Assembly (NCBI RefSeq): GCF_001194135.2
Contig: NC_068998.1
Span: 10,007,843 to 10,043,002, forward strand
Length of the DNA: 35,160 nucleotides
Source: Octopus bimaculoides
Taxonomy: Eukaryota
Direction of reading: 5' to 3'
The notes under the pieces: generated by a model
What the model saw: only the letters and a program-made list of their open reading frames with translations
What the model was told of the DNA's origin: nothing
The model's database searches: none
Shown: positions 734-33,843 of the stretch, one piece after another
Layout of the letters: the number at the start of each line of letters is the position of its first letter
Numbering within the stretch: the first letter of the stretch is position 1
Program-made: the position numbers and the translations under genes

Positions 734-894
734 AGGACTCCACTTGGCATCTTCTTTAGATAACAAAAATTGTGCATATTCACGACGATCATAGATTGTT
801 GTGACACACTTGAAAATCAAAAGAGCAATGATACCCAACACTATTATGCCAATTACCACAGCTAATGGCACCACATAATCAGGAATTGGACAAG
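734..894 (-). CDS. ITGB: Integrin beta exon: TM and membrane-proximal tail, (S)[53 protein letters not shown]
   Basis: 161 bp, phase 1-0; acceptor attattaacag, donor CCT|gtaagt; hydrophobic TM with the snorkel Lys, then DRRE and AKW. Not in the supplied ORF track. Confidence 0.96.
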
Positions 895-1002: not shown

Positions 1003-1668
1003 GCAGACATGCAGGAAGTAAATAGACACATTTAATTTTCAAAATTTCTGATCTAAGTGTTTTAATATGTTTACAGCAGTGTAGAATTTACAACGTAATT
1101 ATTCTTGTTCATTCCAGGTACCATTATATTAGACATTTACGAAAAGTAACCATGCCACGCACAAAAAATTCAGCACAACTGTCAGATTTTCAAAGAGGTC
1201 GTATTGTTGGGCAATCTGAGGCTGGTCATGGCCCACAAAAAATTGCAGAAAATCTTCAAATTCCTCTTGCTTCTGTTAATAGAATTATAATGCAATTCAA
1301 AAGCCAAGGAAAAGAATCAACAGATTCTCGTCCCAGCCAACCTGGGCCCACGGAAAGGAAGCTTCGCTGTTTGAAGGGAATTGAAAACGAACTCTGTTCG
1401 AAGGATTCTGACATTGCAAAACAGCTAGAAGCTAGTCCAAGAACGTGTGTTACATATCTGTATAAGCTTGGGTATTATGGAAATGCAATATTGAGAGTGG
1501 CTGAGGAAAACTGAACAATTTACTTACATTTCCCTTTTTTNNNNNNNNNNTTTGTATTGGAATGTGCAATGGTCATCGTCTACAAACTGACATTTCTTGC
1601 CCGTGGAATCTTCTGGAAAAATATAAAAATCCCAAAGGAAGAAGAAATGAAAGAAAAATTCAAAGAAA

Positions 1669-1701
<33 letters not shown>

Positions 1702-4700
1702 AAAAAAAGGAAATACCATATTTTCCAGTGAACAAGTTGAATTTTTCAGATCAAAATTTACAGCCAAAAAAAGGGTAGGTTGATTTGATAAATTGTTTAG
1801 TCATCATAGGGATGTAAGCAAGCCAACATCAGTTGTCAAATGGCAGTGGACAGTGGGGAACAAACATGATACACACACACACACAGAGTTTCATATATAT
1901 CTATATATATATTACTAGGTTGAGGGAAAAGTTCATGTGCTGTGTTAAAATAATGAACTGAGTGAACACACACCACAAAAATATATAAAAAAGCATTATT
2001 TTAATACGCCGCATGAACTTTTTCCTTAGGCTTATATATATGTATATATATGCAGTGGGATTGAACCAAAGATAACCTGGTTGGGAAGCAAGCTTCTCAA
2101 CTACGCACCAACACATGCACCTACTTGATAAAATACAGAAGAATAAGCATACAGAAAGTGTTCTGAAAGAAAGTTCCTTCAAAAATGAGGCTAAACACTT
2201 TGTTTCTCACAGCACCACTCAGTATGACCTTTGTCAGCTGCTCTCCAACTATCTATTTAAAACTGAATATGACAATAGAACGTCCACACTTAGAATTTGC
2301 ATCATCAGTCTGCAAATTCCTTACCTTGTTCAGTATATCAATCTCTTGGAAATGGTTCAGAAACGTGCATGATAACAAATGCCCACCACCAGACATCTAC
2401 CATACTCCGAACATTTTGCTTCCCTGGGCATGGACACATTGAAGCTCAGACATCTGACAACTGACTTGGTAGACACCCACAAGATTATCCACCATCTTTC
2501 CAACAACTACCTTGGACACCTTCATGAATTCTATATGTCAAATACTCATGGACATGCTTGTTGTTGGCACTCCGTCGCTTACGACGTCGAGAGTTCCAGT
2601 TGATCCGAACAACAGAACAGCCTGCTCGTGAAATTAACATGCAAGTGGCTGAGCACTCCACAGACACATGTACCCTTAANNNNNNNNNNGCCTGCTCGTG
2701 AAATTAACATGCAAGTGGCTGAGCACTCCACAGACACATGTACCCTTAACGTAGTTCTCTGGGGATATTCAGCGTGACACAGTGTGACAAGGCTAGCCCC
2801 TTTGAATTACAGGTCCAACAGAAACAGGAAGTAAGAATGAGAGAAAGTTGTGGTGAAAGAGTACAGCAGGGTTCGCCACCATCCCCTGCGGGAGCCTCGT
2901 GGAGCTTTAGGTGTTTTCGCTCAATAAACACTCACAACGCCCGGTCTGGGAATCGAAACNNNNNNNNNNNNNNNNNNNNNNNNNNNNNNNNNNNNNNNNN
3001 NNNNNNNNNNNNNNNNNNNNNNNNNNNNNNNNNNNNNNNNNNNNNNNNNNNNNNNNNNNNNNNNNNNNNNNNNNNNNAAAAAAAAAAAAAACACAACACC
3101 CTTGACTTTCAGAAACCCTCTTTTCAAGCTCAGAATTGTTGAAGCATGGAATAAACTACACGCATCAGTCATTAGCTGTCAAGACACTACATCCTTCGAA
3201 ACTTCCATGCTTCCTGAAATTTGCCAACAGTACACCTGATGGCTTTTTTTTGTTTTATGTTATTTTTTTTTTTTTCTTAGTTGTAGTGCACCTGAGCACT
3301 GTATACAACAATTTCATTCTAAGAGTGCTTAGCTTCAGTTTCTTTGACCACCAAAAAATGGAATTCTTTAAATTCTTACCAGAAAGTTCCTCAACGACAC
3401 TTATTTCATAGTCGCACAGTTTATCACAAACGTCACTAGTGTAGTTGCCAGACTCGAATACTTTGCATTGCACACAGTGTTTAGTTTCTGAACACATGCC
3501 AGGACAAGTCTGTAATGTAGAATTAGTTAACAAATAAATAAACAAAAATAAAAAATATTTCTCACATGTAGTGGCATTATCTGTATTGTTGTATATGCAT
3601 GTATGTATATATATATATATTATATGTGTGTGTTTGTATATATATAAATATATATATATATATACACACACACTCATACATATACATACAAATAAGTATA
3701 CAACTCAATAAAATGTTAACATAATAGGTCGGACATGATGATGTGAGATAGAGATGAGAAACTGTTTACAGTTGTGGAAATCAGCTGCCCAGCGGATGTT
3801 AACATAAAGCTAAAGATTATTGAAAAAGAAAATATTTATGCTGAACTATTGAGAATCCTACAGTTACTCTATCCAGATTATAAGTTCAGGTTAATACCTG
3901 TAATTATTGGGGCACTGAGATATGTAACACACTGCCTAAAAACCTTTCTTGAGAAATTAGGCTTCTTAAACCAGTACAGAGAAAGCTAATTTGAAGACTA
4001 CAGATCCAATCCATCACTGGAACTATAAAAATTTGTAAAACTTTATCATTTAAATATATATGAGCATGCAACTATATGAATGAGAATACATACATAAAAT
4101 GAAACATAAAAATTTGCACATATACATATATAAATAACTTGTGGTTGATGTTGAAATTCCAATGAAGGAGCCTTGGATCTAGGTTAGAAACTGGCTCTTT
4201 CTCTATTGGCAAGAAATCCGTATCTATAAAAGGCAAGATGTGTGTGTGTGTGTGTGTGTGTGTGTACGGGAATATAATTTATGCACATCCAAAAATTAGA
4301 ACGCATATCGCTCTAGTTTTAGGAGGACATTCCTCATGACCCTACCTGCATTTTCGTCAACTTTTTTTCTCAGAGGCACCCGCGTATAGCTGTGAAAATC
4401 GATTTTCAACCCTAACTTTTAACAATTTTCAAGTCGGAGAAAAAGCTAGCATTGTTTACAAACAGGAATTAAGTTCCCTTCTAGCGACGTGCACGTCTTT
4501 AAGACTTTTGTTGTTGTTTTTTTTCCATCGCGGAAAAAAGTGTTTTGTTGATATACGGGCAACACACACACACATACAAATATGTATGCAATTGGTGTAC
4601 GTACGTATGTGCGTGTGTGTATGTGTATTGCCCGTATATGTAGATATATATATATCTATATATATAAAGCTGTTTTGTTTTATTCCACACAGGTACAAAT

Positions 4701-7700
4701 ATAGAAAAAAAAAAGAAGTTAAAAATGCACTGAGAGCCTTTTAGATGGTTTATTTTTAAAAGGTTTAAATACTAACAGGACAATCTTCACATAATGGACC
4801 ACGGTGAAGGCTCTCTTTATCACAGATGCATTTTCCACATTCACACACGCCTTTGCCATTACAGGTCAACTGGAAAATAACAGTTGTAGAGATATATTAG
4901 ACAGAATAATATAACAAATAGAGAAGAAATTAAAAATAAAATATAAAAATGATATACAGTGATGAAAGAATAATTGAACAGATGTGGAAATTTAAGCAGA
5001 GCCATTGCAATGTAACTAGAAAATAACAAATATTAAATATATTAGAACAAAATGACAGAAAAAATAGAATATGAAGATTTCAGAACTTGCTCATTTTTCC
5101 ATTTATTTCAATCCTTTTCAGTATTATTTGAAGTAATACAAAAAATACTTTTACATTATTTACATTTGATGGATATTTGTCCTCATCTTGTTTGTTGTTA
5201 ACACAACGTTTCGGCTGATATACCCTCCAGCCTTCATCAGGTGTCTTGGGGGAAATTTCGAACCTGGGTTCTCATTGAGTGAATATGGTAGATGGAAACT
5301 AAAAGAAGCCTGTTGTGTGTGTGTGTGTGTGTCTTTGTCCTGCACTACTACTCAACAACCAGTGTTGGTGTGTCTACATCCTTGCAACTTAGCAGATTGG
5401 CAAACAGAGACTCACAGAGGGCAGCAGATGATCAAGAGAAAAGAAAAATGCATATTTAGCTATATCATTTTGAATAAATCATGCAGTAGACTGACTAGTG
5501 TGAGTGTGAATTTGATTAAATGGAAACTGTGTGGAAGCCTGTTGTATATATATGTGTGTGTGTGTTTGTCTGTAATGTGTGTATGCATGTGTCTTTCCAT
5601 TTGTCCCCCATCACTATCACTTGACAGCTGGTGTTGGTTTCTTCATGTTCCTGTAACTTAACAGTTCAGCAAAAGAGCCTGATAAACTAAGTACCAGACT
5701 TAAAAAATAGGTTCTTGATCAAGATGGTCGAGGTGGAGGTGGAGGTGGGGTGGTGCTATTTGTTTGATTAAATCCTTCAAAGCTGAGTCCCAGAATGGCT
5801 GCAGTTCAACGACTGAAACAAGTACAAGAAACAAGTACACTTTAATGACAACAAGAACAACATGTGAGAATTATTTGTAACATTTCACTCACCCCGTTTT
5901 CAGCGNNNNNNNNNNNNNNNNNNNNNNNNNNNNNNNNNNNNNNNNNNNNNNNNNNNNNNNNNNNNNNNNNNNNNNNNNNNNNNNNNNNNNNNNNNNNNNN
6001 NNNNNNNNNNNNNNNNNNNNNNNNNNNNNNNNNNNNNNNNNNNNNNNNNNNNNNNNNNNNNNNNNNNNNNNNNNNNNNNNNNNNNNNNNNNNNNNNNNNN
6101 NNNNNNNNNNNNNNNNNNNNNNNNNNNNNNNNNNNNNNNNNNNNNNNNNNNNNNNNNNNNNNNNNNNNNNNNNNNNNNNNNNNNNNNNNNNNNNNNNNNN
6201 NNNNNNNNNNNNNNNNNNNNNNNNNNNNNNNNNNNNNCGTGAAATTAACGTGCAAGTGGCTGAGCACTCCACAGACACGTGTACCCTTAACGTAGTTCTC
6301 GGGGATATTCAGTGTGACACAGTGTGACAAGGCTGACCCTTTGAATAACAGGCACAACAGAAACAGGAAGTAAGAGTGAGAGAAAGTTGTGGTGGAAGAG
6401 TACAGCAGGGTTCGCCACCATCCCCTGCCGGAGCCTCGTGGAACTTTAGGTGTTTTTGCTCAATAAACACTCACAACGCCTGGTCTGGGAATCGAAACCG
6501 CGATCCAATGACTGCAAGTTCGCTGCCCTAACCACTGGGCCAATGCGCCTCCACTGAGGTTTAAATACAAAAAGTTCACAAAGAACAAGTGTCTGTGTTG
6601 ATGTTACAATAAATCATCTCACAACAGCCTACAGCATAAACAACATACGAAGACTGTCATTCCACAAAAGCCTACAATATAGTATGTCGAATCATCTGCC
6701 TTGCAACAGCCCACATATTAATATTCAAAACATTTGTCTCACAATAGCCTACAATATAACATTTTAAAACATCAATCTCACAACAGCCTATAATATGATG
6801 TTCTGTTTCACAACAACCTACAACATAACATAGTCAAAACACCTGCCTCACAACAGCCTTCAACAAAACATATCAAAACCTCAGTATCAAAATAGCTGAC
6901 AATATAGCATGTTAATATACCCTTCTCACAAGGCAATGAAAGAAGCCTTATGCAGTCCACTCAACTATAAAAATAGTTGCCAAATCTCCCTCAAATCATA
7001 CACTTCTATCTTTACAAAAAGAAAAAACATGTTAAATAATGGTAGTCCCAGGTACATTATATTTGAAAACAAATGGCAAATTGGTGCAGATGGAATATTT
7101 TGGATCATAAGTCTGTTTGAACAGGGCTAACAGAGGGTTAAACAATTGTCTCACAACAGCTTAAATCTGGGCAGACAATATCCCCAATGGTGAGGTACCT
7201 CAGCAAACCAAGATCCAAAGTTTCTGGATTCTCTTGCAGAAGTTCAGGAAAGATATATCAGTCACAGGTTAAGCTACAATGTCCTTGATATGTTGACTTC
7301 AAGAGTGCACAGGCATGTGGAAGGCCGTCAGTTTGAGCACTTCCAGGTCTATGGGCCCTTGAAGTCGACGTACTAAGCAACTGTATATTCACTTTTGCCC
7401 ACCATTGTATATATTTCGGCTCCTTAAGACCATCAGTTTGAGCACTTGAAAGACTGAAATAACACATCGAAGATCATAGAATAATAGAATTCTTATCCTA
7501 AAAAAAGAAACAGAGAAATGAAAAGAACATTCCACTCACAACAAGCAACTGTATACCTACATTTGCCCACCTCTGCATACATACATGCATACATACATAC
7601 ATACATACATGATATACATGCATGCATACACACATACATGCATACATACATACATACATGATATGCATGCATACATACATACATAGAAACTATCAGAGAA

Positions 7701-10700
7701 CAGTCAAAAGAGTAACAAAAGTGCTTACCTCCACAGAGTTTACCATCAATGATGTCACAAGAGTAATCATCACATTGGCAGTACTGCTCAGAAAAGAATC
7801 GGTCCTTACTAGATTTGATGTTGTCACAGGAACACACACCGCACACACACTGGCCTCGGTCAGAGCATATTAGTCCACTTTCCGGGCTGAAATACATTAA
7901 AAAAAAAAACAATGATGATAACTGATTGGTATTTTAGATTGAATTTTAATTCTTGCTGTGTATGTAAAGGGTGCAATATCTGAATGGTTAAATTGTTCTA
8001 TCGGCTATGACAATGTGTGTACCAATTGATCCGATTGATGGAACAGCCTGCTTGTGAAATTAATGTGCAAGTGGCTGAGCACTCCACAGACACGTATATC
8101 CTTAACATAGTTCTCAGGGAGATTCAGCATGACACAGAATGTGACAAAGCTGGCCCTTTAAATTACTGGTACAACTTATTTTCACCAGCTGAGTTGACTA
8201 GAGCAATGTGAAATAAAATACCTCGCTCAAGGAAACAGCACGTTGTCAGGAATCGAACTCACGACTATACAATTCTGAGCTGAATATCCCTAACCACTAA
8301 GCTACGTGACTTCACCACTGGTAAAGCATTGCACATTTAGAGATTCAAGGGTGCAGTGACTGGATGGTTAAAGTAGTTGGGTAGCTACAAAGAATCAAAG
8401 AAGTCCATAGACAAAAAATGGTTGGGAACCACTGTTTAAAAAGAATCACAGAAATAAAATATGAACAACAATGAAACAATATAAAATGAATAATGAAAGA
8501 GGTTTTTACTAACTTCCTACATAGTTCATCAAGAGCCTGATTAGTAATATTCTCTCGATCGCATTCACAGTTACGACCAACATAGTTTTCCTGACAAATA
8601 CAGGCACCGCACTTTTTTATGCCTTTACCACTGCATTCCTGAGTTACCTGCATAACGAAATTAAATAAATAAATCAATAAATTATAACTATTACTTATTA
8701 TTATTTTTATTATTATCATCATTATTAGTCAAGACGAAGAGTGCGATTCGATTGAATAGATGTTTTATTCTTTGAACAATATTTTGACAGAACGTCTGTC
8801 TTTCTCAAGTTCAAACCGAAAGGTGATTAAAAATTAAAAATTTCAGAAATCTAAGCGTAAACTATGAACAAGAGTAACCAGCGTCCATACGTTGATGGAA
8901 TGACATCATCAGTTTTTGTCAGTTTTTTAACAAGCAGAAAGAAAGAAAGAAAAAGGAAGACGACAGAAAAAGAAAAGAAAAAGAGAGAAAGAAGAATATT
9001 CAATCAAACAGTTTTGTATAAATTTGATGATATTCTCCTGTCATCTTGTTCATTCCTCCAGGGCGTGATGTCAATAACCCGCAAATATTATTATTATTAT
9101 TATAATTATTATTATTATTATTATTATAAACAATTATGGTGACAGGCTGGAAGAATTGTTAGCATGCCAGACAAAATTCCACTAAGCATTTTGAAACCAT
9201 TATTATAAGGTGGTCCTAAGGTGGTGAACTGGTAGAACCGTTAACACGCTGGGCAAAATGCTTAGTACCATTTCATCCTACAAGGGTCAATTGAATGAAG
9301 TACTGGTCAAGCACAGGGATGATCTTGTTGACTAACCCCTGCCTCACTGAAATTTCTGGCCTTGTGCCAAAATTTGATACAATTATTAATACTGGTATTA
9401 TTATTGATGAAGGCTTTCACCAGGAATAACTTTTGGTAGATTTTAGACTTCACATCATCAGAAAATACACCTTTAAGTATTTCTTTATGTTTTGAGTGGT
9501 AAATCCATTGTTGGATTAACCATTAAGCAAAATAAGCATGTGTTTGGGGTGTCAAGGGAAGGAGAGGACACCATAAAAATGGTGAATGGTTTATGGCACA
9601 AATTCCCAGTCTGAGAATCGAAACCGCGATCCTACGACCGCGAGTCCGCTGCCCTAACCACTAGGCCATTGCGCCTCTACACATGCCTTCGCTAATGATC
9701 GGCTAAAGAAAGTTATAGAATATGGTAAAAGCATGTCAAACTGTAATAAAAGGATACTGTGGAATAATGTCACATACCTTAGTCGTTTCATTCTGACATT
9801 CACACTCACAGAGCAACTCAAGGTGGATGGTTAGATTATTGACCAGACCAACAGGATGGATGTTAAAAGTACGTTTCCTGTCAGCCTCTTTCTCTGGACA
9901 TTTATCAACTTCAATATCAACATCAAATAAAACCTGAAAATTGAAAAAAAAAAGAAAAAGAATAAAAAATAATTTCTGTTTAACAGGTATCACATTGAAA
10001 GCTATAAAATTACAAACTGTTTGTATTGTTTATAATAAATTTCATTTTATATTTTTTGCCCACAAGAGATTATGTCCGATCTTTAGCATACTGCTGTATG
10101 TTTTCTCAAATCACAATCACTGGAAAAGTTGTTGATAAGAATTACTAACAAAAACAAAACTGATAAGTATGCACAGCTGTCGCAAATTAAGTTTAATTAT
10201 CAATAAACATCAGCTTGGAGGACAATTTACTCAACCAACAGAGGAAGGTGACCAATCAAACTGATTATGTAAACAGAATTCTTTTCCACCTATTCTTGTT
10301 GGAACCTTTGATATGGAGTACTGAAATTTTAATCCCTTTCACACTTATAAAACATCAAGCAAACTAAAAAATTTGTCAACCGTTATTGTCAGTATGAGCA
10401 GAACTTATGAATCGTTGACTTTGAAGGAGAAATTAAATATGTTGAATATGCATTTGAACGTGGCAAGAGAGCTGCCAGAAGGTATTTTGATGTCAATGAA
10501 GCCAATGTTCGAAATTGGCATAAACAGTACGACAAACTTAAAACTGTGCCTAGTAATAAACAGACAAAAATAAAAACATACTATCAACATTATCCATATC
10601 GTTACATTTTTTTCAGTCAGGAATATCCATATCACTATGTATGTCAATGGTACTCCATTGTGATTGGTAGAAACTCCAAGCATTGTAAAATATGATCCCA

Positions 10701-14303: not shown

Positions 14304-16379
14304 TCATCGNNNNNNNNNNTAAGTTTAGGCACCAGAATTAAGTATGGTATTATCCAGACAATTCCAAAATAAGGTGATTAAAAATCAAAATAAGCAACAT
14401 GGATATTCAAGGTTAATGCAGTACGATCGTTTCATGCGACTCCATTTATTTAAGCAATGCGAGCATTATATGAAATGTAAAATTTAGAGCAATTCTCAGC
14501 TGCACAAAGATATAGAAATTTACTGAAATTTCATTTCAACAGAAGGACATATTATCGTAACTACATTTAAACTCTCCAAGTAGAAAGGAAGAATACAAAA
14601 AAACCATTTTGACTTAGCCAGACCATACAGGCTAGTCTGTTTAATGAGTTTAATGAGTTGTTGTTACTGAAGTGAAGTTAAATAACTGGAGTTTCTGAGC
14701 AGAAGCTACTGAGCTGGGATTACTGAAATTAAGTTAACGAGCAAAGGTTAATGAGCTAAGGTTACTGACTTGATGTTACAAAACTAAGATTGCATTAGAA
14801 GTTAGAGAACTGAAAATGTATACAAGTGAAATGTGTGCATGTATTAAATGTGACAGAGAGTATGTGGCTTAGTGGTTAGGGCATTTAGCACACAATCATT
14901 AGATCATGAGATCGATTCTCAACAGTGCGTTGTGTCCTTGAGCAAGACACTTTATTTCGTGTTGCTCCAGTCCACTCAGTTGGCAAAAACGGGTTTTATC
15001 TGTATTTATTTCAAAGGGCCAGCCTTATCATATTCTGTGTCACACTGAATCTCCCAGAGAACTATATTAAGGGAATGCATTTCTTTTGGGTGCTCAGCTA
15101 CTTGCATATTAATTTCAAGAGCAGAATGTTTTGTTGATCAGATCAACTGGAATGTTCATGATTGTGGCTGATGGAGTGAGGAGAGCAAGAAGAGAGAAGC
15201 CAGCATGTAATGTAAAAAGTATGCAATAATTTACCTGATAATTTGACTTAATAACATCTAAAATGTTAGCTGAGTCTTTCTGTAGTGTTGTCACAGTGGA
15301 ACCAAGCAGGAAGGTCGATAGATGCTTGTATGTTATCATTTGGTCTTTGGGAACAGCAAATATTACATTGACCTTTTTCGAATTGACCTGAGATCTGATC
15401 TGGCTGACAGACGGGTAGTCCTGCAAAGATAAAACAAAGACTTCTATCAGATGGAAAATATCTCCATCAAGAAATAAGAAGTTAATAAAACAGACTTTAC
15501 ATGGTCACATGGCATGCTGCAAGAAATGATTGAATCTCCCTCAAATTACACCAGGATCTTTTTTTATTCAATTCCTAATAATTTTTAATGATAAAAATGT
15601 AATGGGATTTTTATAAACATCAAATCATTATGGGTGTCCAGTAGAGTAAAGTAAGAATCAAAGGAGCTCATAGGTACAAAAATGGTTGAGAAACACTCAT
15701 TGGGAAGAAGATAAATTTCATCTTTGTTTACAGGAGAAGAGAGCTATGTACATGTTTTGGTCTTTTAGGCCTCATCAACATAGTACTTATCTATATATAT
15801 AAAACAAAAGATTCTGTATATCTGTGTGTCTGTTTGTGTGTGTGTAGGGTCATTATGCATTTCCACATTTTTCAACCAATTTTACTCAAATTTGATACAC
15901 TGATAGCTTATGCTCCAAGAGTGGTCATGACCTAGTAGCACCATATTTTTTCAGCATGCAGTGACCATCTAACTAAAATATGTATGTTCTTTTCTCACCT
16001 CATCTTTTTTTTCTGTTGAAGAGTGTATGTTCGAAACATAAAAGACTTTTCCTTTTATTTTTCCTGAACGTAAACCTAATATATTCTGTTTGTTTTTATC
16101 TAGTCTTCTTGTTGTTTATAAATTTTGCACCTAAGTACTCATCATCTACTCAAAACTTCCTGATCAACAGACAAATATTTCTACATATTTAAAAATAGCA
16201 CTACAAATAATTTGAAGCCTGTATAATTCAAATAATTAAAAATAAGATTATCAACAGCATTCACTAAGTCACCACATAAATTCATTGTCCAAATACATGT
16301 CATTGGTCTATTTGAATTATTTCCCTTAACCCCTTTTATTTTAGAGAATTTCGTAGATGAAAACTATGTGGATGCTCAT

Positions 16380-17197: not shown

Positions 17198-20100
17198 CAT
17201 ACACACACACACACATTTCTTTGTCAGCATAAATAGGATTGCTAATTTGAAGAATTATAAATGTGTGTGTGTGTCTATACATACTTTCATACATACATAC
17301 ACACATACATACATGTACACACATAAACATACACACACACACACACACACACGTTTGTATTTGTATGTGTGTGGCTTGATTGGAAGAATGTGATTTCGAT
17401 TCCTGGAACAGGTAATGCACCGCATTTTGAGCAAAACGTTTCATTTTATATTGCTCCAGTCCACTCTGCCGACAAAAGTGAGTAATCCTGTGACAGACTG
17501 ACATCTTGCTCAGGTGGGAAACACAGACACCACAGAATCCACAAAACCAGCCTTCTGAGCCTATGGGCCTATGACTCGAGTAAAAAACCTCTGCTCTCTT
17601 AATAGATATATGTATGCCATAAAATATATACAATTACAAATGAACTACTATTGAATTCACCCTTTAAGATACATAATGTTATGAACTGAGCCTGAAAGAT
17701 TGCTTGAGATACCAACATGCCATGTATCTCAAGCAATCTTTCAGGCTCAATTGTGTCCTCATGGGTTATAAGGCACAGCTGTGACTGACCTACTGACCCA
17801 AAGACACCTTTGTTTTAGTCTTCTATTATGGGTCAGATAGAATTCACTGAGGCGGATTTTTTGTGGCCAGATGCCCTTCTTGTCATTAAGCATCACCTAT
17901 TTCCAGGTAAGATAAGTATTTTCCCATGGCTGGAAGACTGGAACCAAACGACACTGTTTCTACAATGGCAACACCCCTTTACAATCATCACATGATGAGA
18001 GGAGGAGGAGGAGACTAATAGACACCACTCATCCACCCACACACACACACACATACATACAAGCAGGCTTCTTTCACTTTCCAGCTACCAGATCTATTCA
18101 CAAGGTTTTGGTCAATTCAGAAATTTGCCAAGGTGCCAAGCAGTGAGATTGAATGTGGAAACATGGGTTTTACTAAGGTAAAACCAGAAATGAAGAAAGG
18201 CGAAATCCAAGATACCTGTACTTTACTCTCAGAGTATTCCCCAGCTGCTGTTAAATGACATTGCTCATCGTTTGGTTTCACAACTCCGAGTAACTGAATA
18301 ATAAAGAGAAGACAATAAAGAGATTCAGTCAAAGGATTGTGTTATATACAAAGGATCACAGTATGAAAATATCTGAAATAAGCAAGATTAAAGCTTAGAC
18401 ATGATGTGGTGATATAAGCAAGGAAAGTGAGGCTTGGAGAATATTTACATCTGAAGGCTGCGTTGAATGAATCAGGCAAAGATTCATGTAAAGAGACCAG
18501 TAATTGCTTCTCTTTAATGAAAGCTAGAAGGAGCAGAAGTAACTGAAACAAGCAAAAGAGTATATCCAGTTCACATTAGTGGTGAAGGTGGTGGTGGTGG
18601 TGGTGGTAGCAGTGGTGGTGACGGTGGTAATGTTGGTGGTGGTGGTGGTGGTGGTGGTGGTAATGGAGATATTGACTGTTGCTGCTGTTTTGTTTCTCTT
18701 TTAGTTCCAGGTCATCCCTTATCAAAGCAGAATTATGGTCAAAGATATTCCAGCCATCCATCCCCCCCCTTCCCCCAGATTCTTTTGTTCATTTTTTTGG
18801 CAGGCATAGTTTATCTAAGGTTACCATCACCCAGTGTGTGCAAAGGGTGTGTGTGTGTGTGTGTGTGTGTGATATGAAGTCACACTTATTCTGCCTTTTC
18901 CAGGCAGGGGTCAAAGGATCATAGTGAGGGGTGAGAAGAGGAGGAGATAGTGAAGAGGAAGGAGAGGAAGAAGAAGAAGAAGAACAACAACAACAACAAT
19001 AGTAACAACAACAACACTCACAAACATACACAAACACAAACACATGCACACACACACACACGTACACACACACACACACATGTACACACACCCAGACAGA
19101 CAAACACATGCACACACACAAACACACACACACAAACACAAACATACACACACATACACAAACACACGCACACATACACACACACATACACACACAGACA
19201 AACACACATTGTATTATGTGGGTGGAACAGAGAGGCAAAAGTTAAAGAAGCAGAAAAAGACCAAAAAATAAAAAATAAGACAACAGAAGACAACAAATAA
19301 AGTCAGAATAAGAGGAAGAAAGAGGAAAAGAGGAGTGAAGCTATTTAGAGATAAAACAAGGGTCTCTGAATCATAACAAGTGATTTGAAACCATAGCAAC
19401 TGAGTGTGTAGTGTGTGTGTGTGTGTCTGTGCATGTGTGTGTGTTTCCACATGTGTAGTGAGTATGTATATCTGTGCATCATGTACAGCGTGTATGTGGT
19501 GTGTTTGTGTGTGTATGTGTGTGTGTGTGAGTGTGTGGCATGGTGTGTATTGTGTGTGTGTGTGTGTGTGTGTTGTACAGAGATAAAACTGCCATCTCCT
19601 GAGTGTTTGACCTAGGAGAGAAGGGAATGCCTAATAAACAGCACCTGCAACCACCACCACCACTCCCAGAAAAAAAAGGGGACCATCAGAAGCCAATACA
19701 TGGTCACTCGAGTTGCTAGAAATCACAGCCGAATCTCCCCCCAAAAAATCACACTCTATTATCTTAAAAATGAACATGTTGGACAATGTAGTCCTAGGTT
19801 CACTGAATAGAAATAAGAATGGGATGGTCATGGCTGGAATACCTTTGCTAATAGTTCAGCTGAATCAGGGATGACCTAGGGCTAAACAATTGCCAAAATA
19901 ATAGACTGACAGAAACTGCTGTACCTTTCCTGAGCCTGCAGTATGGAAGGAGCTACCAGCAATAAAAAGGACCAGTTTTCTTGATTTGCTTCGCCAACCA
20001 ATTTGCTAAAAAGAGGATAAAATTAATAATAATAATAATAATTTTTTTATTGATCACAAAGACTCATAAAATTCAAAACATGTCATACAAAAGTGGCTAC

Positions 20101-23100
20101 GTATATCAATATACAGGGTGTTCAGGCCAAATTTGATGATTTTTTTTATATCTCCCTTTTATTTTATTTTTTTCAGGAACAGCTTCATGTATTGGTGAAC
20201 AGTCAATTCATTTTATTAACCCATTACCTCCCATAATTCTATTAACTGGAATTTCTTTTATGAGACTTTGATTTCTAGCATAAAACAGCCTTAGAAACAT
20301 GCTGGAATGATCAAAATAACATTTCAAAATAACATTTTAAATAGAAATAAGCAAGATATTGGGTGAAAAATTAGCGAACCTCATTTGAATATCAGAGAAA
20401 TATACCTAGTAGATATAGCAAAAAGGTTAGATATGTGTAAATATTCACAGATAATTACGAAATTTGTAATTTTTAAGTGATCTCATATGAGATCACTGGT
20501 AGGTAATGGGTTAACCATGAGGTTGAGAAAAAGAGGGGATGAAACGAAGACAGACAAAACAAACATTGGGGTCAGGGGGATCGAATGAGATGAAATGTAT
20601 GAATAAACAAACAATTAAAATATATACAATTAAATGAGAATGAGTGATTTACAAAAAATGAAGCGGAGGACGCGGTCGACCCCACAAACCACATAATGGT
20701 ATTGGAGAACATAAAGATTAAAGTTGTATTTGAGAAACTGGTGGCTGACTTGGAGGACTGGAAGCCATTTAAATATTGGTAAAGGGTTACTCATGTCATG
20801 ATGACCAATGCCAAGTACTAAAATGCTGGCATCGTGACAACTGCTCAATGCTCTATGAACACTGTAAAGGGTGTAAGACATGACATGGACATCATGAAAA
20901 CCAAGTTCCCCGAAACTGTGATGGTTGGTCTTTGTGTATGTCACCAGTGAAGGTGACATCATGCCACCCCATATTTTTGAACAGGGCCTTAGGATCAATT
21001 CCATAGTAGCTGGAGTCTGTGGTCAATCCCATGTGTTGGAGAAGTTTGCTGCTGGAATGCCATATGTGTGACAGCAGGCTTCAGCTCCTTGCCATATGTC
21101 CAGAAAGAGTTAGAAGTGGTTGTAGGAGAAGTTCTACAACTTTATCAGTTTCTAACCTAATTCCTCCATTTATAATCCCATGGTTGAGGAAGACACCAAC
21201 GTCTCTGCCTGTAACACCAAGGCCAAGCTGGTGGCTGATGTCAAGGAGGTGTTCAAAGACCTTCCCCAGGGCACTGTGAAGAATGCACACACTAGATTTT
21301 AGAACCTCCTTGAAGCTGTGTTGGAAGCTGAAAGCAGCTACATTGAATAAACTGTTATCTCCTCGGTATAATCTAGTTGGTATCTTTATATTTTTTAAAA
21401 ATACTTTTATCATTTTTTTCACCAACTAGAGTAACTTGGGACTTATGAAAGGAAATCTTTATATTATTATTCAGAGTATATGAAACAAGGGTAAACTAAA
21501 AGTCTGAAACCAAGTATGGACGTTTAGTCCAAACTTACAAAAAGGCTTTGGACAAGCAAAGGGTTGACCCTTTATTTCATGTGTATCAACACATGTGTAA
21601 CACAGGTCATATTTTCTTGGCATCCATGCATCATATATGATACATATTCCCAATTTTTTTCACCGACTAGAGTAACTTGGGATTTTTAAAGGGAAAGCTT
21701 TATATTTATTACTCAGAACTTATGAATCATGGGCTGGGCTAACTAAAAATCTGTAAGCAAGTAAGGACATTTAGGACAAACTTATGAAAATACTTTGGAC
21801 AGGAGAAGGTTAAGGTATTTAATGTAAGGGGCACAAAAGCAATTTAAAGGGTCAGTTTACTCAAAGATAAGGAATGTATATTCTGTATTTAGAAATGTGA
21901 GAAAACTCCTGTTGCTACTTACTTTGCAAACCAATGCTTGCATGAGAGCATCAAACCCAGCTTCAGGAATGTCATTGCTGCCAGAGATTTCGGCTGCAGC
22001 TACCATTTGCTGGATTTCAAAGGAAGACAAATGATTAGACTTAACATATAACAACAATAACAACATCAACTACAAGTTAATGAGAGGGCCTCGAAATACT
22101 TGCTAGACCTGTTAGAAATAGCAGTCAAATCTTCCTTAAATTACACCTTACCAACTTAAAAAAGAAAGGGCATTGCATAGTGTACAGGGTGTCCACAAAG
22201 TCTGGCTACATGCAGTAAATAAAATCATAACATAAACAATTAAATATAAGGAATAATAATTTCTTAAAGTATGTGTTAATCCCCATGTACCCAGACTTTG
22301 TGGACACCCTGTAGTTTTAGATGTATATACTCATTGATCACAGGCGTTTTCTTCCTCCAAAAATGCAGTGATAAATGAATCAGTGATAACTAAATCATCT
22401 CCATGAACTTTGTAAAGAGAACAAATGGTAGATTCCTTGACACAAAACTCACAGATCGGAATCCATTTCTTTAAATGGAAGACAAAGCAAGTTCTTATAG
22501 AGAATGTTGTAGTCACTTGACTCTTTCGCCTTCAGATTACTGTGTCAAATACAATGCTTATCTATTCACCCTGTGTTGAATTAGTCATGCATTATCTCAT
22601 AGCTCTGAGATTTCAATGCTGCATCTGCTCGTTTTTAGAATGACATTGTAGGGTAGGCATGAAAGGCCAGAATCTGGCCAGTTTGACCACAAAACAGGTA
22701 GAATATTCTGACTAGATATGGCTAGTTTAAATGATAAAGTATGAAACTGTTCCCAATATAGAATACTCTTGAAATTCTTCAAACCAGCAAAAGGAAGTCA
22801 TCATCCTCATCATCACCACTGCCGCCGCCGTCGTCGTCATCATTCTGGCATAGGTTGAATAGTTTGATGGGGCTGGTTAGGCAGAAGACTACACCAGGCT
22901 TCACTGTCTGTTTTTGGCAGGATTTTTATGGCTGGACACTCTTCCTAACACCAACCGTTTTACAAAACCAAACCAAACAAAGGAAAAAAATAGGGGCACA
23001 CAAATAAGAAGGAAAGATATTATGCTTACAGAGAATTTGGTACCATTTGGAGACAGTCTCATGACATGTCGGTAATCAAAAGTCAGAGCACAGTCATGGC

Positions 23101-23287
23101 ACCTGAGTAAAAGAGAATCAAAGAATATATTTGAAAATTAAGCTAAACGAAATTGAAGAAAAGTCAGGTGAGCATTTTTCTAATAATATACATACACATA
23201 TACACATGCACTACATAACCATGTGTGTATGCATATGTATGTATATACAATATATATATACACATGCATATATCTTATATATATATG

Positions 23288-24564: not shown

Positions 24565-26763
24565 CCTTGTACTTACATTGTTATGTTGCTATCAGTGTAG
24601 ACAAATGGCGGTATTTCTTTCTCAACAAAGGATCCGAATCCAAGCAGGAATTTTTTGGTAATCTTCTTCATTTCTTTAGCTGTAGAGAAGTAGATGGAAC
24701 ATACTTACATATACATAGCATGTCTGAGTACATCTGTGTCAGTCAGATTGTCTATATTTGTACCAACCCAAGACTATGTTTGACCTGAGACCATGGTCAA
24801 CTGAAGACTGATTGGACCTCCTGATGTTATGGTTGACTCATGGCTATGATAGACCTGGGGCTATATAGTAGAAGACACTTAATCAAGGTGACACACAGTG
24901 GAATTGAACCCAAAACTATTGGATCTAATCCCACAGTGGTGTGCAAATATGGCCATACTTCAGAAGTAAACTTCTTAAACATGGCCCATACCTTTGTTCA
25001 CACCCACCATTGCTACCACCACCACCACCACCACCACAACTAATACTACTGGTCTGTATTTCAAGTTAGTTATTATTTATCTGTCTATAGAGTGATGGAG
25101 TGGCATAATTGTCAGAGAACTGAATAAAATACCTTGTAGTATTTCTAATTGTTTAGGATCTGGTTTCAAACCAAACTGAGGCCAACTTTGCCTATCATTC
25201 TACCAAGGTCGATAAAATAAAATATCCACTAACCTCACTCCTTTTCAAAATTGCTGTCCTTGTGTCTAAATTAGAAATAATTGTTTATCTGTCACCCAAA
25301 TATCTTACAATCATAGCAACATCACCATCCTCATTCCTGTCATTTAATATCTGTCTTCCATGCTGACAAGAGTTGAACAGTTCAACAGGAACTTGTGATC
25401 CAGAGGACTGTCACAAGCTCTACTAGTCTCTACAGCTGGATGCCCTTCCTAACATCACATAAAATGTAAAGCAATAAAAATAACATAGACAGCAAAAAAT
25501 AAAGCAATCATTGTGCCTATTCTCACCAATGATCATGAATTTTTGGGAAATGAGCAAAAGAATACGATTGCAAATACATTTGGCCAAAATAAGGTTTCTT
25601 TGAAAGATCTCTGGAGTAACGTAACTTAACAGGGTGTGTAGCTCAGACATTAGGGGGGGGGGGGCTTCGGCTTAATCTGCAGATTTTCCACACTGGGAGG
25701 TCATAGCCCTGGTACTACAGATATGTAATTAGAATGCTGAAGGAAAGAATTTCAAGATGGATTCTTCTTCAAGCCAAACCAAACAACAGGAAACCCATGG
25801 GTAGACCAAAAATGGGAAGGTTGGGTAATGACCATTTTCTCAGTTTGTCGTACTTAGGAATCCAGCAAGAAAGTCAAATGAAATTAGCTTCTGATAGGAC
25901 CCTATGGAGGACATGCCTGAGGATTCTACCCCCATGACCCTCCCAGGAATTGTGAGTGGAAAATATGGATGAATTGATGGATGGGTCTTACCAAGTGTTT
26001 GTCCAAGTTTTGACAATGTTTCTTTACTACGTTTCATTGAAGCAGAGAGATCCATAAGGACATACAGGTCAACAGCACTGTCTTTAGCCTCCCGATAGGC
26101 CAGCTGTATTCTGTGAGGCTTTCCTGAAAGTAGACAAAAACCCAGGCAAGAATTTAAATACTTACAGTAAAAAAAGCAGCAAGAGTTTATAAGTTCACCA
26201 TTATCACCGTTTAATGTTCATTTTCTATGTTGGCACTAGTTGGATGGTTTGGCAGGATCTGATGAGCCACAAAGCTGCATCGTGCTCCAATGTCAGCTTT
26301 AGCATGGTTTCTACAACTGGATATCATCCTTAATGCCAACCACAGGTACAAGAACATACGCACATACATACATATGCACTCACACACACACATAATTAAA
26401 CTATAGCTGTGGGCAAAACAAATCTTCTGAGTGAATTTCGAAAATGGGAACAAAAAGAAGCCCACAATATACAAATATATCAAAAACATAATGATATTTG
26501 TTAGGCAGCTGATGATGAGAATATATGTTTGATATTTCTGTGAATCATTTATATCTCATGGTCTCATTGTTCTAAGTTATCCTTCATTCAAACAGGGTTG
26601 AACTTGTTACTAGATTCTTAGCATTATGGTGTTTTGGTTTATGGTAATTTCATTGTTTATACTATACATAAATCAATACAAGTGTGATTGTCCTTTATTG
26701 TGTTTCTTTATCATGGCCAGAGTAATAAATTATAGAAAAGTTCCTAGATTAAGGAGATTTTGT

Positions 26764-26801
<38 letters not shown>

Positions 26802-28193
26802 CAAATACTTACTGGGTCTTAACTTTAATTTGATCACCTGGGGTTGGATATAAATACCGGTTGTGTTTCCTATTTCATCTCGTAGATCATCATTCTGAAA
26901 TAGTTGTTCACAATGTTTATTAATTAGAAATTAATAATTAGTGTTCAGTAATTAAAAAGTAGGTGATTTATCAATTAAAGATAAAAATATATTTCTCTTT
27001 ACAACATAAATCATCACCATCATTTTCACCATCATTTACTCTTTTNNNNNNNNNNNNNNNNNNNNNNNNNNNNNNNNNNNNNNNNNNNNNNNNNNNNNNN
27101 NNNNNNNNNNNNNNNNNNNNNNNNNNNNNNNNNNNNNNNNNNNNNNNNNNNNNNNNNNNNNNNNNNNNNNNNNNNNNNNNNNNNNNNNNNNNNNNNNNNN
27201 NNNNNNNNNGGCCATGCTGGAGCACCGCCTTTAGTCGAGCAAATCGATCCCAGGACTTATTCTTTGTAAGCCTAGTACTTATTCTATCGGTCTCTTTTGC
27301 CGAACTGCTAAGTTATGGGGACGTAAACACATCAGCATCGGTTGTCAAGCGATGTTGGGGGACAAACACAGACACACAAACATATACATACACACACATA
27401 TACATACATACATACGACGGGCTTCTTTCAGTTTCCGTCTACCAAATCCACTCACAAGGCTTTGGTCGGCCTGAGGCTACAGTAGAAGACACTTGCCCAA
27501 GGTGCCACATAGTGGGAATGAACCCAGAACCATGTGGTTGGTAAGCAAGCTACTTACCACACAGCCACTTCTTTCATCATCATTTTAACATTTATTTTCC
27601 CAAGCTCACATAAGTCAGATGGAATATGTTGAGGCAGCTTCGCTAAAGCCAGATACCTTTCCTGCTGCCAACCCCAACCTGTTTCTAAACAAGGTAATAC
27701 TTCCTCATGTTTTTCATGAAAGACTGGAAACAAACAACATTGCTTGTATGATGATGATGATGATAATTGCTCATTTACAACCATCACATGATGTCTAGAC
27801 ATGGGTACATACAAACAAACACACACACACACCCACACATATCTTTTATCCTTTGCATGTTTCAGTCATTTGATTGTGGCCATGTTGGGGCATTGACTTG
27901 AAGAATTTTCATTTGAATGAATGGACCCCAGTACTTATTTTCTTAAGCCTGCTATTAATTCTATCCGTCTATTTTGCTGAACCACTAAGTTATGGCAACG
28001 TAAACACACCAACACCAGTTATCAAACAGTGGCGGGGGACAAACACAAAGACATATGGACAGACAAGCACACACACGTATGCACGCACACACACATGTAC
28101 GCACGCACACGTACGTATGTATGTATGCATACATGTATGCATATAAATATCCACACATACATATATGAATGAAAATGTGTATCTCTCTCTCTT

Positions 28194-31376: not shown

Positions 31377-31400
31377 NNNNNNNNNNACACACACACACAC

Positions 31401-33444: not shown

Positions 33445-33843
33445 AAAACGCTTATGAAATTTATACATAAATATTTGCTGAAAATAACATGTATTTTTAC
33501 ATTTATTTATTTAACAGTATTTAACAAATAGGTTTATTGTCAATTAAAAGATTTCAATTAAAAAACATATATAAAATCAAATTGCCCATAAAAAGTATTT
33601 GCTGTCCACGGACCCCCTGTGGTCCGCGCNNNNNNNNNNNNNNNNNNNNNNNNNNNNNNNNNNNNNNNNNNNNNNNNNNNNNNNNNNNNNNNNNNNNNNN
33701 NNNNNNNNNNNNNNNNNNNNNNNNNNNNNNNNNNNNNNNNNNNNNNNNNNNNNNNNNNNNNNNNNNNNNNNNNNNNNNNNNNNNNNNNNNNNNNNNNNNN
33801 NNNNNNNNNNNNNNNNNNNNACATACATACATACATACATACA

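What the first reader, a model, noticed from the sequence alone, without database searches (positions are those of the whole stretch)
26026..26052. Integrin beta with intact MIDAS but no ADMIDAS aspartates (DLSASMKRS)
Seen: D-L-S-A-S-M-K-R-S. Known: in beta3 numbering D119/S121/S123 form the MIDAS and D126/D127 bind the ADMIDAS Ca2+. These two Asp are near-invariant; vertebrate beta8, with Asn-Asn, is the known exception and has atypical activation. Here they are Arg and Ser, placing a positive charge where the cation would sit. Inference: a ligand-competent invertebrate beta subunit that lost ADMIDAS regulation, apparently independently of beta8. It may differ in Ca2+ inhibition, Mn2+ response and headpiece opening.
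Basis: partly seen in the sequence, partly recalled or inferred. Interest (0 to 1): 0.72.

Follow-up and report, generated by a model that had tools for sequence, protein, structure and literature searches.

The report
Octopus integrin beta paralog lacking ADMIDAS
The motif is real and belongs to a conserved, transcribed octopus integrin beta gene that has lost one of its three regulatory metal sites, but such losses are common among invertebrate integrin beta subunits, so the finding is only modestly unusual.

Summary
Window 26026-26052, minus strand, reads DLSASMKRS inside an exon of an integrin beta gene (PDB hits to beta6/beta1/beta3, E about 1e-53). The window is Octopus bimaculoides; the gene is the partial RefSeq model XP_014777706.1.

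It is not an assembly error or a pseudogene. O. sinensis and an octopus RNA contig carry the same KRS (the RNA contig the same codons). Argonauta has ST and a more distant cephalopod-like transcript has PS. dN/dS against the RNA contig is 0.18.

"Intact MIDAS" is only partly right. DxSxS and the E220 equivalent are kept. The beta3 Asp-251 equivalent, which links MIDAS and ADMIDAS, is Gly in all five orthologs. The N215 equivalent is Ser, and the conserved beta5-alpha6 Thr is Pro or Asn.

"Near-invariant Asp-Asp" is wrong for invertebrates. Of 159 cluster representatives, 93 have DD and 42 have no acidic residue at either position. These include beetle, wasp, sea-spider, abalone, snail, scallop and mussel subunits. 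O. bimaculoides also has a canonical beta-PS with DD.

The loss is independent of beta8, and unlike beta8 the orthologs keep a typical beta6-alpha7 loop and NPxY tail. Arg is not conserved, so a "built-in cation" is weakly supported. Modest interest.

The parts
26026..26052 (-). beta-MIDAS motif [10 protein letters not shown]1, S3 and S5 (MIDAS) are kept. Positions 8 and 9 (ADMIDAS Asp-Asp in typical betas) are Arg and Ser.
25992..26123 (-). beta I exon 1: beta1 strand, beta-MIDAS motif and alpha1 helix ([44 protein letters not shown])
   Evidence: 91% aa identity to the octopus transcript L001
31110..31220 (-). PSI domain C-terminal exon ([37 protein letters not shown])
26813..26894 (-). hybrid domain N-terminal exon ([27 protein letters not shown])
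24577..24679 (-). beta I exon 2: [13 protein letters not shown], with Glu at the SyMBS position of beta3 D158 (24 of the 160 surveyed representatives also have Glu; D134/E24)
23030..23102 (-). specificity-determining loop exon ([24 protein letters not shown]). The C-x2-C form is also seen in other protostome betas.
21923..22009 (-). SyMBS/MIDAS loop exon: [13 protein letters not shown]. The N215 equivalent is Ser. The D217, P219 and E220 equivalents are kept.
19925..20005 (-). beta4-alpha5 loop exon [17 protein letters not shown]. The Gly codon GGT at 19955-19957 replaces beta3 Asp-251, and AGDGK is AGSGK.
18216..18293 (-). beta I exon ([26 protein letters not shown])
15235..15420 (-). beta I exon with the beta5-alpha6 loop FAVPKDQ (conserved Thr replaced by Pro) and a typical beta6-alpha7 loop LQKDSANIL (Asp-Ser motif kept), plus alpha7
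   Evidence: PMC6889490
11990..12065 (-). hybrid domain C-terminal exon 1 ([26 protein letters not shown])
9778..9933 (-). end of hybrid domain and start of I-EGF1 ([16 protein letters not shown]...[11 protein letters not shown])
8514..8647 (-). I-EGF exon ([30 protein letters not shown]...)
7729..7886 (-). I-EGF2 exon ([20 protein letters not shown]...[10 protein letters not shown])
4777..4869 (-). I-EGF4 exon ([31 protein letters not shown])
3380..3509 (-). beta-tail domain exon ([43 protein letters not shown])
1551..1612 (-). beta-tail domain exon ([21 protein letters not shown]), cut off by the assembly gap at 1541-1550
734..894 (-). transmembrane and membrane-proximal cytoplasmic exon ([53 protein letters not shown]). 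The last exon with the NPxY motifs is not in the window.
   Evidence: the orthologs end ...RENPIYKVPKSTYMNPLYGGKK

Best explanation
The motif belongs to a functional, divergent integrin beta-subunit paralog of Octopus bimaculoides (RefSeq XP_014777706.1, a partial model). It is the ortholog of O. sinensis 'integrin beta pat-3' and Argonauta hians 'integrin beta pat-3-like', and it sits beside a separate canonical beta-PS gene in the same genome.

Shown:
- In this lineage all three side-chain ligands of the ADMIDAS Ca2+ site are gone. Positions 8 and 9 of DxSxSxxDD are R/S, S/T or P/S. The beta3 Asp-251 equivalent is Gly.
- The primary MIDAS ligands (D1, S3, S5, E220 equivalent) and most SyMBS ligands are kept.
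- The beta6-alpha7 Asp/Asn-Ser loop is kept. The orthologs keep two NPxY motifs in the cytoplasmic tail.
- The gene is under purifying selection, and its ortholog is transcribed in another octopus.

Inferred:
- The beta I domain binds two metal ions rather than three, and no Ca2+ next to the MIDAS.
- By analogy with beta8 and with engineered beta1 D137A/D138A, integrins using this subunit should show little Ca2+ inhibition or Mn2+ activation through the ADMIDAS.
- They should also show a smaller affinity gap between closed and open headpiece states.
- They would still be coupled to talin and kindlin from inside the cell.

The loss is independent of vertebrate beta8. It is one of many such losses in invertebrate beta paralogs.
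For: - Identity of the domain: PDB phmmer hits at E about 1e-53 with column-wise alignment of all the metal-site loops. The O. sinensis ortholog matches Pfam Integrin_beta at 4e-86, plus PSI, EGF, tail and cytoplasmic domains.
- Gene structure: 17 exons with GT-AG introns and consistent phases.
- Species and gene: P0204 (XP_014777706.1, O. bimaculoides) matches the window's exon peptides by eye.
- Orthologs share the loss at positions 8/9, Gly at D251, Ser at N215, non-Thr in beta5-alpha6, and a KDS or NNS beta6-alpha7 loop. The four full-length orthologs have the NPIY...NPLY (NPLY...NPVY in P0203) tail.
- Identical KRS codons in the octopus RNA contig L001. SRR3401912 is an octopus metatranscriptome (PMC11662614).
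- dN/dS is 0.18 over 626 codons, and 0.20 in the beta I exons. The beta I exons are among the best-conserved parts at 79-96% aa identity.
- A canonical O. bimaculoides beta-PS with DLSNSMADDK, STDSDFHYAGDGK and FAVT exists.
- NJ tree: the cephalopod clade is recovered in 200/200 bootstraps and is never sister to the canonical cephalopod beta (0/200).
- Mechanistic analogies: beta8 N8/N9 has no ADMIDAS ion (PMC6889490). ADMIDAS mutation raises closed-state affinity and lowers open-state affinity (PMC9265148). Asp-251 coordinates the ADMIDAS directly in open states and the MIDAS through water (PMC3691460).
Against: - No metal-binding, ligand-binding or expression data exist for this protein. All functional statements are by analogy.
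- Loss of the Asp-251 equivalent and the N215-to-Ser change could weaken the MIDAS/SyMBS itself, so ligand competence is not assured.
- The window lacks several exons (assembly gaps and window ends). The full-length reading frame in O. bimaculoides is therefore inferred from orthologs.
- Transcription is shown for an ortholog in another octopus, not for this locus.
- The tree is neighbour-joining only.
Confidence: 0.62

Rival explanations
1. Assembly or sequencing error, or a decaying pseudogene. The Arg/Ser codons would not reflect a functional protein.
For: The window is a draft assembly with 12 N-runs. The RefSeq model is partial and patched with intronic sequence.
Against: Two base changes per codon would be needed to restore Asp. 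The same KRS occurs in O. sinensis (independent assembly) and, with identical codons, in an octopus RNA contig. Non-Asp residues also occur in Argonauta and in a distant ortholog. dN/dS is 0.18. All 17 exons found are open, with canonical splice sites.
Confidence: 0.02
2. The Arg at position 8 acts as a tethered positive charge that occupies the former Ca2+ position and holds the alpha1 helix and beta6-alpha7 loop as the ion would.
For: - Arg8 is kept in three Octopus-type sequences.
- The beta6-alpha7 loop keeps an Asp (KDS) that could pair with it.
- The divergent gastropod betas Patella P0219 and Candidula P0221 also read R at position 8.
- Lys or Arg at position 8 occurs in 15 of 43 sequences without acidic residues at 8/9.
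Against: - Argonauta has Ser and the distant ortholog has Pro at position 8, while the rest of the site is conserved. The charge is therefore not required in this lineage.
- There is no covariation with the beta6-alpha7 Asp: Argonauta has KDS with Ser8.
- The Lys/Arg recurrence is not corrected for shared ancestry.
- No structure was examined.
Confidence: 0.12
3. The subunit has lost metal-dependent ligand binding altogether. It would act as a decoy, a structural partner or a non-canonical receptor, because the MIDAS outer-shell Asp-251 equivalent and one SyMBS ligand are also gone.
For: - Gly at the D251 position is rare: 4 of 160 aligned sequences (the window, its Argonauta ortholog and two others), against 147 with Asp.
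- AGDGK is AGSGK, and the N215 equivalent is Ser.
- Asp-251 coordinates the MIDAS through water in all states (PMC3691460).
Against: - All inner-sphere MIDAS ligands (D1, S3, S5, E220 equivalent) and the D217/P219 equivalents are strictly conserved in five orthologs.
- The beta I exons carrying these loops are among the most conserved parts of the protein.
- The full ectodomain, transmembrane segment and talin/kindlin-type tail are retained.
Confidence: 0.2

Closest known systems
Vertebrate integrin beta8 (ITGB8)
   Same: It has a natural beta-MIDAS motif without the two ADMIDAS aspartates (DLSASMHNN), and no ADMIDAS ion was seen in crystals (PMC6889490). The conserved Thr of the beta5-alpha6 loop is also replaced (Gln in beta8, Pro or Asn here).
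   Different: - Beta8 keeps polar Asn-Asn and keeps the Asp-251 equivalent. The octopus protein has Arg-Ser and Gly.
- Beta8 has an atypical beta6-alpha7 loop. The octopus protein keeps the typical Lys-Asp-Ser loop, and its orthologs keep two NPxY motifs; beta8's own tail was not examined here.
- Phylogenetically unrelated: this is a protostome, cephalopod clade.
Canonical protostome beta-PS / pat-3 / beta1-type subunit, e.g. O. bimaculoides integrin beta-PS (P0346) and Lottia gigantea beta (P0207)
   Same: Same domain architecture (PSI, hybrid, beta I, I-EGFs, beta-tail, transmembrane segment, NPxY tail). About 42-44% identity to the lophotrochozoan canonical betas Ridgeia, Lottia and Mya. 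The DxSxS, E220 and D217 equivalents are identical.
   Different: The canonical subunit has DLSNSM-ADD-K, SGNLDSPEGGFDA, STDSDFHYAGDGK and FAVT. The window gene has [29 protein letters not shown] and FAVP. It is a separate gene and clade.
Other invertebrate beta paralogs without the Asp-Asp pair
   Same: They keep DxSxS but have non-acidic residues at positions 8/9, often Lys or Arg at 8 and His or Tyr at 9. Examples, with residues at 8/9 and source calls:
- Tribolium beta-PS: DH (one acidic)
- Nicrophorus and Diorhabda: KY
- Holotrichia: KH
- Polistes: VY
- Nymphon: HH
- Haliotis: TH
- Haliotis: KE (one acidic)
- Bulinus: PY
- Sinanodonta: QK
- Argopecten: QF
- Patella: RE (one acidic) and Candidula: RQ
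   Different: Nearly all of them keep Asp (a few have Asn or Glu) at the D251 position and keep AGDGK. Only the cephalopod clade, Nymphon and one partial beetle sequence show Gly. A sister relation to the Patella/Candidula/Haliotis-KE group is only weakly supported (42/200).
Engineered ADMIDAS mutants (beta1 D137A/D138A in alpha5beta1)
   Same: The same two positions lack carboxylates. They give the experimental expectation of higher closed-state affinity, lower open-state affinity and blunted Mn2+/Ca2+ effects (PMC9265148).
   Different: These are laboratory point mutants in an otherwise typical beta1. The cephalopod protein has co-evolved changes at D251, N215 and the beta5-alpha6 loop.

Membership tests
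Integrin beta subunit | beta I (VWA-type) domain inserted in a hybrid domain, matching Pfam Integrin_beta and solved beta chains | tested here: met
   The window exons hit PDB beta6/beta1/beta3 at E about 1e-53. The O. sinensis ortholog P0202 matches PF00362 at E 4e-86.
Integrin beta subunit | MIDAS DxSxS motif plus the E220-equivalent Glu | tested here: met
   DLSAS and PEAGFDA with Glu, conserved in five orthologs
Integrin beta subunit | PSI domain, four I-EGF domains, beta-tail, single transmembrane segment, cytoplasmic NPxY motifs | tested here: inconclusive
   All are present in orthologs P0019, P0201 and P0202. In the window only the PSI C-half, parts of the EGFs, the beta-tail and the TM/membrane-proximal exon are found. 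The rest falls in N-gaps or outside the window.
Typical (ADMIDAS-bearing) integrin beta subunit | Asp-Asp at beta-MIDAS positions 8 and 9 (beta3 D126/D127) | tested here: not met
   Arg-Ser in the window. RS, ST or PS in the orthologs.
Typical (ADMIDAS-bearing) integrin beta subunit | Asp in the beta4-alpha5 loop (beta3 Asp-251) linking the ADMIDAS and the MIDAS outer shell | tested here: not met
   Gly (GGT at 19955-19957) in the window and in all five orthologs. Asp in 147 of 160 aligned sequences.
Typical (ADMIDAS-bearing) integrin beta subunit | beta6-alpha7 loop with the (Asp/Asn)-Ser motif whose -1 carbonyl binds the ADMIDAS ion | tested here: met
   LQKDSANIL in the window; KDS or NNS in the orthologs. 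Motif definition from PMC6889490.
Typical (ADMIDAS-bearing) integrin beta subunit | An ADMIDAS Ca2+ ion actually bound | not testable with these tools
   Needs a structure or metal-binding assay. Absence is inferred from the lack of any carboxylate ligand.
Vertebrate beta8-type atypical subunit | Asn-Asn at positions 8/9 with an atypical beta6-alpha7 loop | tested here: not met
   Arg-Ser, not Asn-Asn, with a typical KDS loop. The orthologs also have NPIY and NPLY in the tail; beta8's tail was not compared here.
Vertebrate beta8-type atypical subunit | Orthology with ITGB8 | tested here: not met
   The NJ tree places the clade among protostome betas, apart from the vertebrate sequences. No beta8 sequence was included in the tree, which is neighbour-joining only.

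The most novel reading that the evidence does not exclude
A cephalopod-wide, talin/kindlin-coupled integrin beta subunit has dismantled the whole ADMIDAS (positions 8, 9 and the Asp-251 equivalent) yet remains a regulated, ligand-binding receptor. In this reading a basic residue at position 8 (Arg in Octopus, Lys in many arthropod paralogs) serves as a convergent, metal-free substitute for the Ca2+ ion. That would make it a natural test of what the ADMIDAS is for.
Probability: 0.12. Interest if true: 0.55.

Novelty: new member of a known kind. Interest (0 to 1): 0.3.

Why it matters
The ADMIDAS is thought to keep integrins in discrete low- and high-affinity states and to mediate Ca2+ inhibition and Mn2+ activation. 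Natural subunits that lack it show how far integrin regulation can do without that site.

This gene adds a conserved cephalopod example. It differs from beta8 in keeping the beta6-alpha7 loop, and its orthologs keep a tail with two NPxY motifs, while it also loses the Asp-251 equivalent.

The broader point from the survey is that about a quarter of representative invertebrate beta clusters lack both aspartates. This is not discussed in the papers I could search, and it may be more useful to integrin biologists than this single gene. For genome annotation, the finding is an ordinary divergent paralog that RefSeq has already modelled.

Tried and rejected
I used the database copy of the partial gene model, P0001, instead.
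- The look-up of contigs encoding P0001 found nothing.
- Splice-site-aware searches for the missing hybrid, I-EGF3 and beta-tail exons found nothing. Ortholog-guided tblastn later found the hybrid exon at 11990-12065 and the beta-tail exon at 1551-1612. It also showed that the others are absent from the window: a ~17-aa hybrid exon, I-EGF3, the signal peptide and PSI N-half, and the last cytoplasmic exon.
- I first thought the specificity-determining loop was unusually short. I rejected this because the C-x2-C form is seen in other protostome betas.
- Pseudogene or assembly error: rejected.
- Orthology to the canonical beta-PS: rejected, because O. bimaculoides has a separate canonical beta-PS.
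- I did not run structure prediction. It does not model metal ions and returns no coordinates from which the orientation of Arg8 could be measured.
- The taxon of SRR27666088 (L002/P0203) could not be identified.
- Literature searches for ADMIDAS with invertebrate, mollusc or Drosophila terms found only a coral EDL variant and no treatment of this question.
Full report
**Observation**

On the minus strand, window 26026-26052 reads GAT CTC TCT GCT TCA ATG AAA CGT AGT, which is D-L-S-A-S-M-K-R-S. The plus strand has a stop codon there. The motif sits in an exon at 25992-26123 (minus) that encodes [44 protein letters not shown], bounded by an AG acceptor and a GTAAG donor.

I concatenated this exon with the other coding segments on the minus strand and compared the product with PDB chains. 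The best hits are integrin beta6, beta1 and beta3 at E about 1e-53. HMMER aligns DLSASMKRS opposite beta6 DLSASMDDD without gaps. Arg and Ser occupy the positions of beta3 D126/D127, which are 'D8' and 'D9' of the beta-MIDAS motif DXSXSXXDD defined in PMC6889490.

**The gene**

The window is a draft eukaryotic assembly with about 35% GC, many (TG)n and (TA)n runs and 12 N-gaps. An integrin beta gene runs on the minus strand from at least 31220 down to 734. I located 17 exons with GT-AG introns and mutually consistent phases. In gene order they are:

- PSI C-half (31110-31220)
- Hybrid N-part (26813-26894)
- Seven beta I exons (25992-26123, 24577-24679, 23030-23102, 21923-22009, 19925-20005, 18216-18293, 15235-15420)
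- Hybrid C-part (11990-12065, 9778-9933)
- I-EGF exons (8514-8647, 7729-7886, 4777-4869)
- Beta-tail (3380-3509, and 1551-1612, which is cut by a gap)
- The TM/membrane-proximal exon (734-894)

Five pieces are not in the window sequence: the signal peptide with the PSI N-half, a ~17-residue hybrid exon, I-EGF3, the second half of one beta-tail exon, and the last cytoplasmic exon. They fall in N-gaps or beyond the window ends.

P0204 is XP_014777706.1, 'integrin beta-PS-like [Octopus bimaculoides]'. Read side by side, it carries the window's exon peptides unchanged, which identifies both the species and the gene. That RefSeq model starts at [10 protein letters not shown] and bridges the gaps with intronic read-through.

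**Is it real and functional?**

Orthologs were found by an exhaustive HMMER search and a follow-up word-index search:

| Sequence | Source | Length | beta-MIDAS motif |
|---|---|---|---|
| P0202 | O. sinensis 'integrin beta pat-3 isoform X3' | 792 aa | DLSASMKRS |
| L001 / P0201 | 2759-nt intron-less contig from run SRR3401912 | 774 aa | DLSASMKRS, same codons as the window |
| P0019 | Argonauta hians 'integrin beta pat-3-like' | 777 aa | DLSASMKST |
| L002 / P0203 | transcript contig from SRR27666088, 54% identical, taxon not identifiable here | 775 aa | DLSYSMGPS |

A virome paper describes SRR3401912 as the octopus metatranscriptome.

Against L001, 626 aligned codons give dN 0.079 and dS 0.437, so dN/dS is 0.18. 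For the beta I exons alone it is 0.20. At the amino-acid level the beta I exons are among the best conserved (79-96%), against 68-70% for the PSI and hybrid exons.

Converting CGT or AGT to an Asp codon would need two substitutions each. Assembly error and pseudogene are therefore excluded for practical purposes.

**What else is changed**

Aligning the whole beta I domain shows that the changes are not confined to positions 8 and 9:

- **Asp-251 equivalent.** Typical betas read STDAGFHYAGDGK; this gene reads [13 protein letters not shown]. The equivalent of beta3 Asp-251 is Gly (GGT, 19955-19957), and the second conserved Asp is Ser. In beta3, Asp-251 binds the ADMIDAS ion through water in closed states and directly in open states. 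It also binds the MIDAS ion through water in all states (PMC3691460).
- **SyMBS.** The Asn (beta3 N215) is Ser. D217, P219 and E220 are kept, and D158 is Glu, as in 24 of the 160 surveyed representatives.
- **beta5-alpha6 Thr.** Among human subunits this Thr is missing only in beta8. Here it is Pro (FAVPKDQ).
- **beta6-alpha7 loop.** It keeps the typical Lys-Asp-Ser motif (LQKDSANIL), which beta8 lacks.

All of these states are shared by the five orthologs, with three exceptions in the distant one: Asn for Pro, Glu for the second Ser, and Glu at the D217 position.

The four full-length orthologs have a signal peptide, PSI, I-EGFs, beta-tail, a transmembrane segment and a tail with YDRREY, NPIY and NPLY (NPLY and NPVY in P0203). 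'Intact MIDAS' holds only for the inner coordination sphere.

**How unusual is it?**

The exhaustive search returned 1170 hits at E<=0.001. I aligned the 149 proteins it listed, together with 17 earlier hits and the window protein. Of the 159 other sequences with an aligned D1, counted without gaps from D1:

- 93 (58%) have Asp-Asp at positions 8/9.
- 23 have one acidic residue.
- 42 (26%) have none.
- Among sequences of 600 aa or more, the counts are 53, 13 and 32.

These are cluster representatives at 50% identity. Divergent lineages are therefore over-weighted, and the figures are not per species.

Named examples without the pair:

| Group | Protein | Residues at 8/9 |
|---|---|---|
| Beetle | Tribolium castaneum integrin beta-PS | DH |
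| Beetle | Holotrichia 'integrin beta subunit' | KH |
| Beetle | Nicrophorus, Diorhabda | KY |
| Cricket | Anabrus | AH |
| Wasp | Polistes | VY |
| Moth | Loxostege | KI |
| Sea spider | Nymphon | HH |
| Abalone | Haliotis beta1-like | TH |
| Abalone | Haliotis beta-PS-like | KE |
| Snail | Bulinus | PY |
| Mussel | Sinanodonta | QK |
| Scallop | Argopecten 'beta-6-like' | QF |
| Limpet / land snail | Patella / Candidula | RE / RQ |

By contrast, the D251 position is Asp in 147 of 160 aligned sequences. It is Gly only in the window gene, its Argonauta ortholog, Nymphon and one partial beetle sequence.

It is not true for invertebrate paralogs, molluscan ones included. The rarer feature is the Gly.

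**Place in the family**

O. bimaculoides also encodes a fully canonical beta-PS (P0346: DLSNSMADDK, SGNLDSPEGGFDA, STDSDFHYAGDGK, FAVT, NPIY/NPQY). Acanthosepion has one too.

In neighbour-joining trees on about 760 columns:

- The five-member cephalopod clade is recovered in 200 of 200 bootstraps.
- It is never sister to the canonical cephalopod beta (0 of 200).
- It lies among protostome betas, far from the vertebrate subunits.
- It groups with the divergent gastropod set (Patella, Candidula, Haliotis-KE, Bulinus) in only 42 of 200 replicates, which may be long-branch attraction.

The loss is therefore independent of beta8. Whether it is cephalopod-specific or older in molluscs is open.

**Mechanism**

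Shown: no carboxylate remains at any of the three ADMIDAS side-chain positions. The inner MIDAS ligands and most SyMBS ligands are conserved under purifying selection. The intracellular NPxY motifs are conserved in the orthologs.

Inferred: beta8 loses the ion with the milder Asn-Asn change. This domain should therefore bind metal at the SyMBS and MIDAS only. In alpha5beta1, mutating the two aspartates raises closed-state affinity, lowers open-state affinity and removes much of the Mn2+/Ca2+ effect. In alphaVbeta6, the Asp-to-Asn swap raised Mg2+ affinity 6-fold and cut Mn2+ responsiveness.

By analogy, integrins using this subunit should be less sharply bistable and less sensitive to Ca2+/Mn2+. 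They should remain open to talin/kindlin control, unlike beta8. I put about 0.6 on this overall picture. The descriptive part is near certain; the functional part is about even.

Rivals:

- **The subunit no longer binds ligand through the MIDAS**, because the outer-shell Asp is gone (0.2). The strict conservation of the inner ligands argues against this.
- **Arg8 substitutes for the cation** (0.12). It is weakened by Ser in Argonauta and Pro in the distant ortholog. The recurrence of Lys or Arg at position 8 (15 of 43 sequences without acidic residues) is a lead worth testing.
- **Artefact or pseudogene** (0.02).

**Literature and novelty**

Full-text searches combining ADMIDAS with invertebrate, mollusc or Drosophila terms found only a coral beta with EDL for DDL (PMC2397394) and general reviews. 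None describes ADMIDAS-less protostome subunits or this gene.

The gene itself is already annotated in RefSeq for two Octopus species and for Argonauta. I class it as a new member of a known kind: a naturally ADMIDAS-less beta subunit, with beta8 as the characterised example and many uncharacterised invertebrate paralogs.

Its distinctive points are the additional Gly for Asp-251 and, in its orthologs, a tail with two NPxY motifs. Interest is 0.3. A specialist would find it a useful natural variant, not a surprise.

Noticed in passing
window 1541-1550, 2680-2689, 2960-3077, 5906-6237, 11282-11436, 14310-14319, 27046-27209, 28280-28416, 30816-30993, 31377-31386, 31955-32323, 33630-33820: There are twelve assembly gaps (N-runs). 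Together with the window ends they hide several exons of the integrin gene. The RefSeq model XP_014777706.1 (P0204) bridges them with intronic read-through, for example '[16 protein letters not shown]...' from the ORF at 10405-10749 (minus).
   Followed up: partly
window 1152-1514 (+): A 120-aa ORF inside an intron matches winged-helix/HTH domains of Tc1/Sleeping-Beauty-type transposases (HTH_29 E 1e-6; HTH_SB E 1.6e-5, below its cut-off). It is probably a transposon remnant.
   Followed up: partly
window 2774-3142, 6376-6531 (+); 9526-9660, 6463-6603 (-): Several dispersed copies of one short repeat give near-identical ORFs (…[15 protein letters not shown]…, …WLGQRT…[11 protein letters not shown]…). 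The first 23 residues of the database gene model P0001 derive from such a copy, not from the integrin gene.
   Followed up: no
proteins P0050, P0066, P0076, P0081, P0084, P0097, P0112, P0114, P0117, P0120, P0150, P0152, P0159, P0167 and the window: Among beta subunits that lack acidic residues at beta-MIDAS positions 8/9, Lys or Arg at position 8 recurs (15 of 43), often with His or Tyr at position 9. This is not corrected for shared ancestry. It may be a convergent replacement of the ADMIDAS cation.
   Followed up: partly
proteins P0219 (Patella vulgata), P0221 (Candidula unifasciata), P0112 (Haliotis), P0154 (Bulinus): A well-supported divergent gastropod beta group (200/200) has R or K at position 8, Asn at the D251 position and (except Bulinus P0154, which keeps Asn) Ser at the N215 position. 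Candidula has Gly for the MIDAS S5. It may be the sister of the cephalopod clade, but support is weak (42/200).
   Followed up: partly
proteins P0353 and P0397: Two public records that score as full-length integrin beta subunits carry unrelated names: 'protocadherin alpha' (JGI) and 'sodium-dependent multivitamin transporter-like [Sarcoptes scabiei]'.
   Followed up: no
protein P0020 (776 aa): This database protein contains the N-terminal half of a beta6-like beta I domain twice (DLSASMVDD appears twice). It is probably a mis-assembled or mis-predicted model.
   Followed up: no
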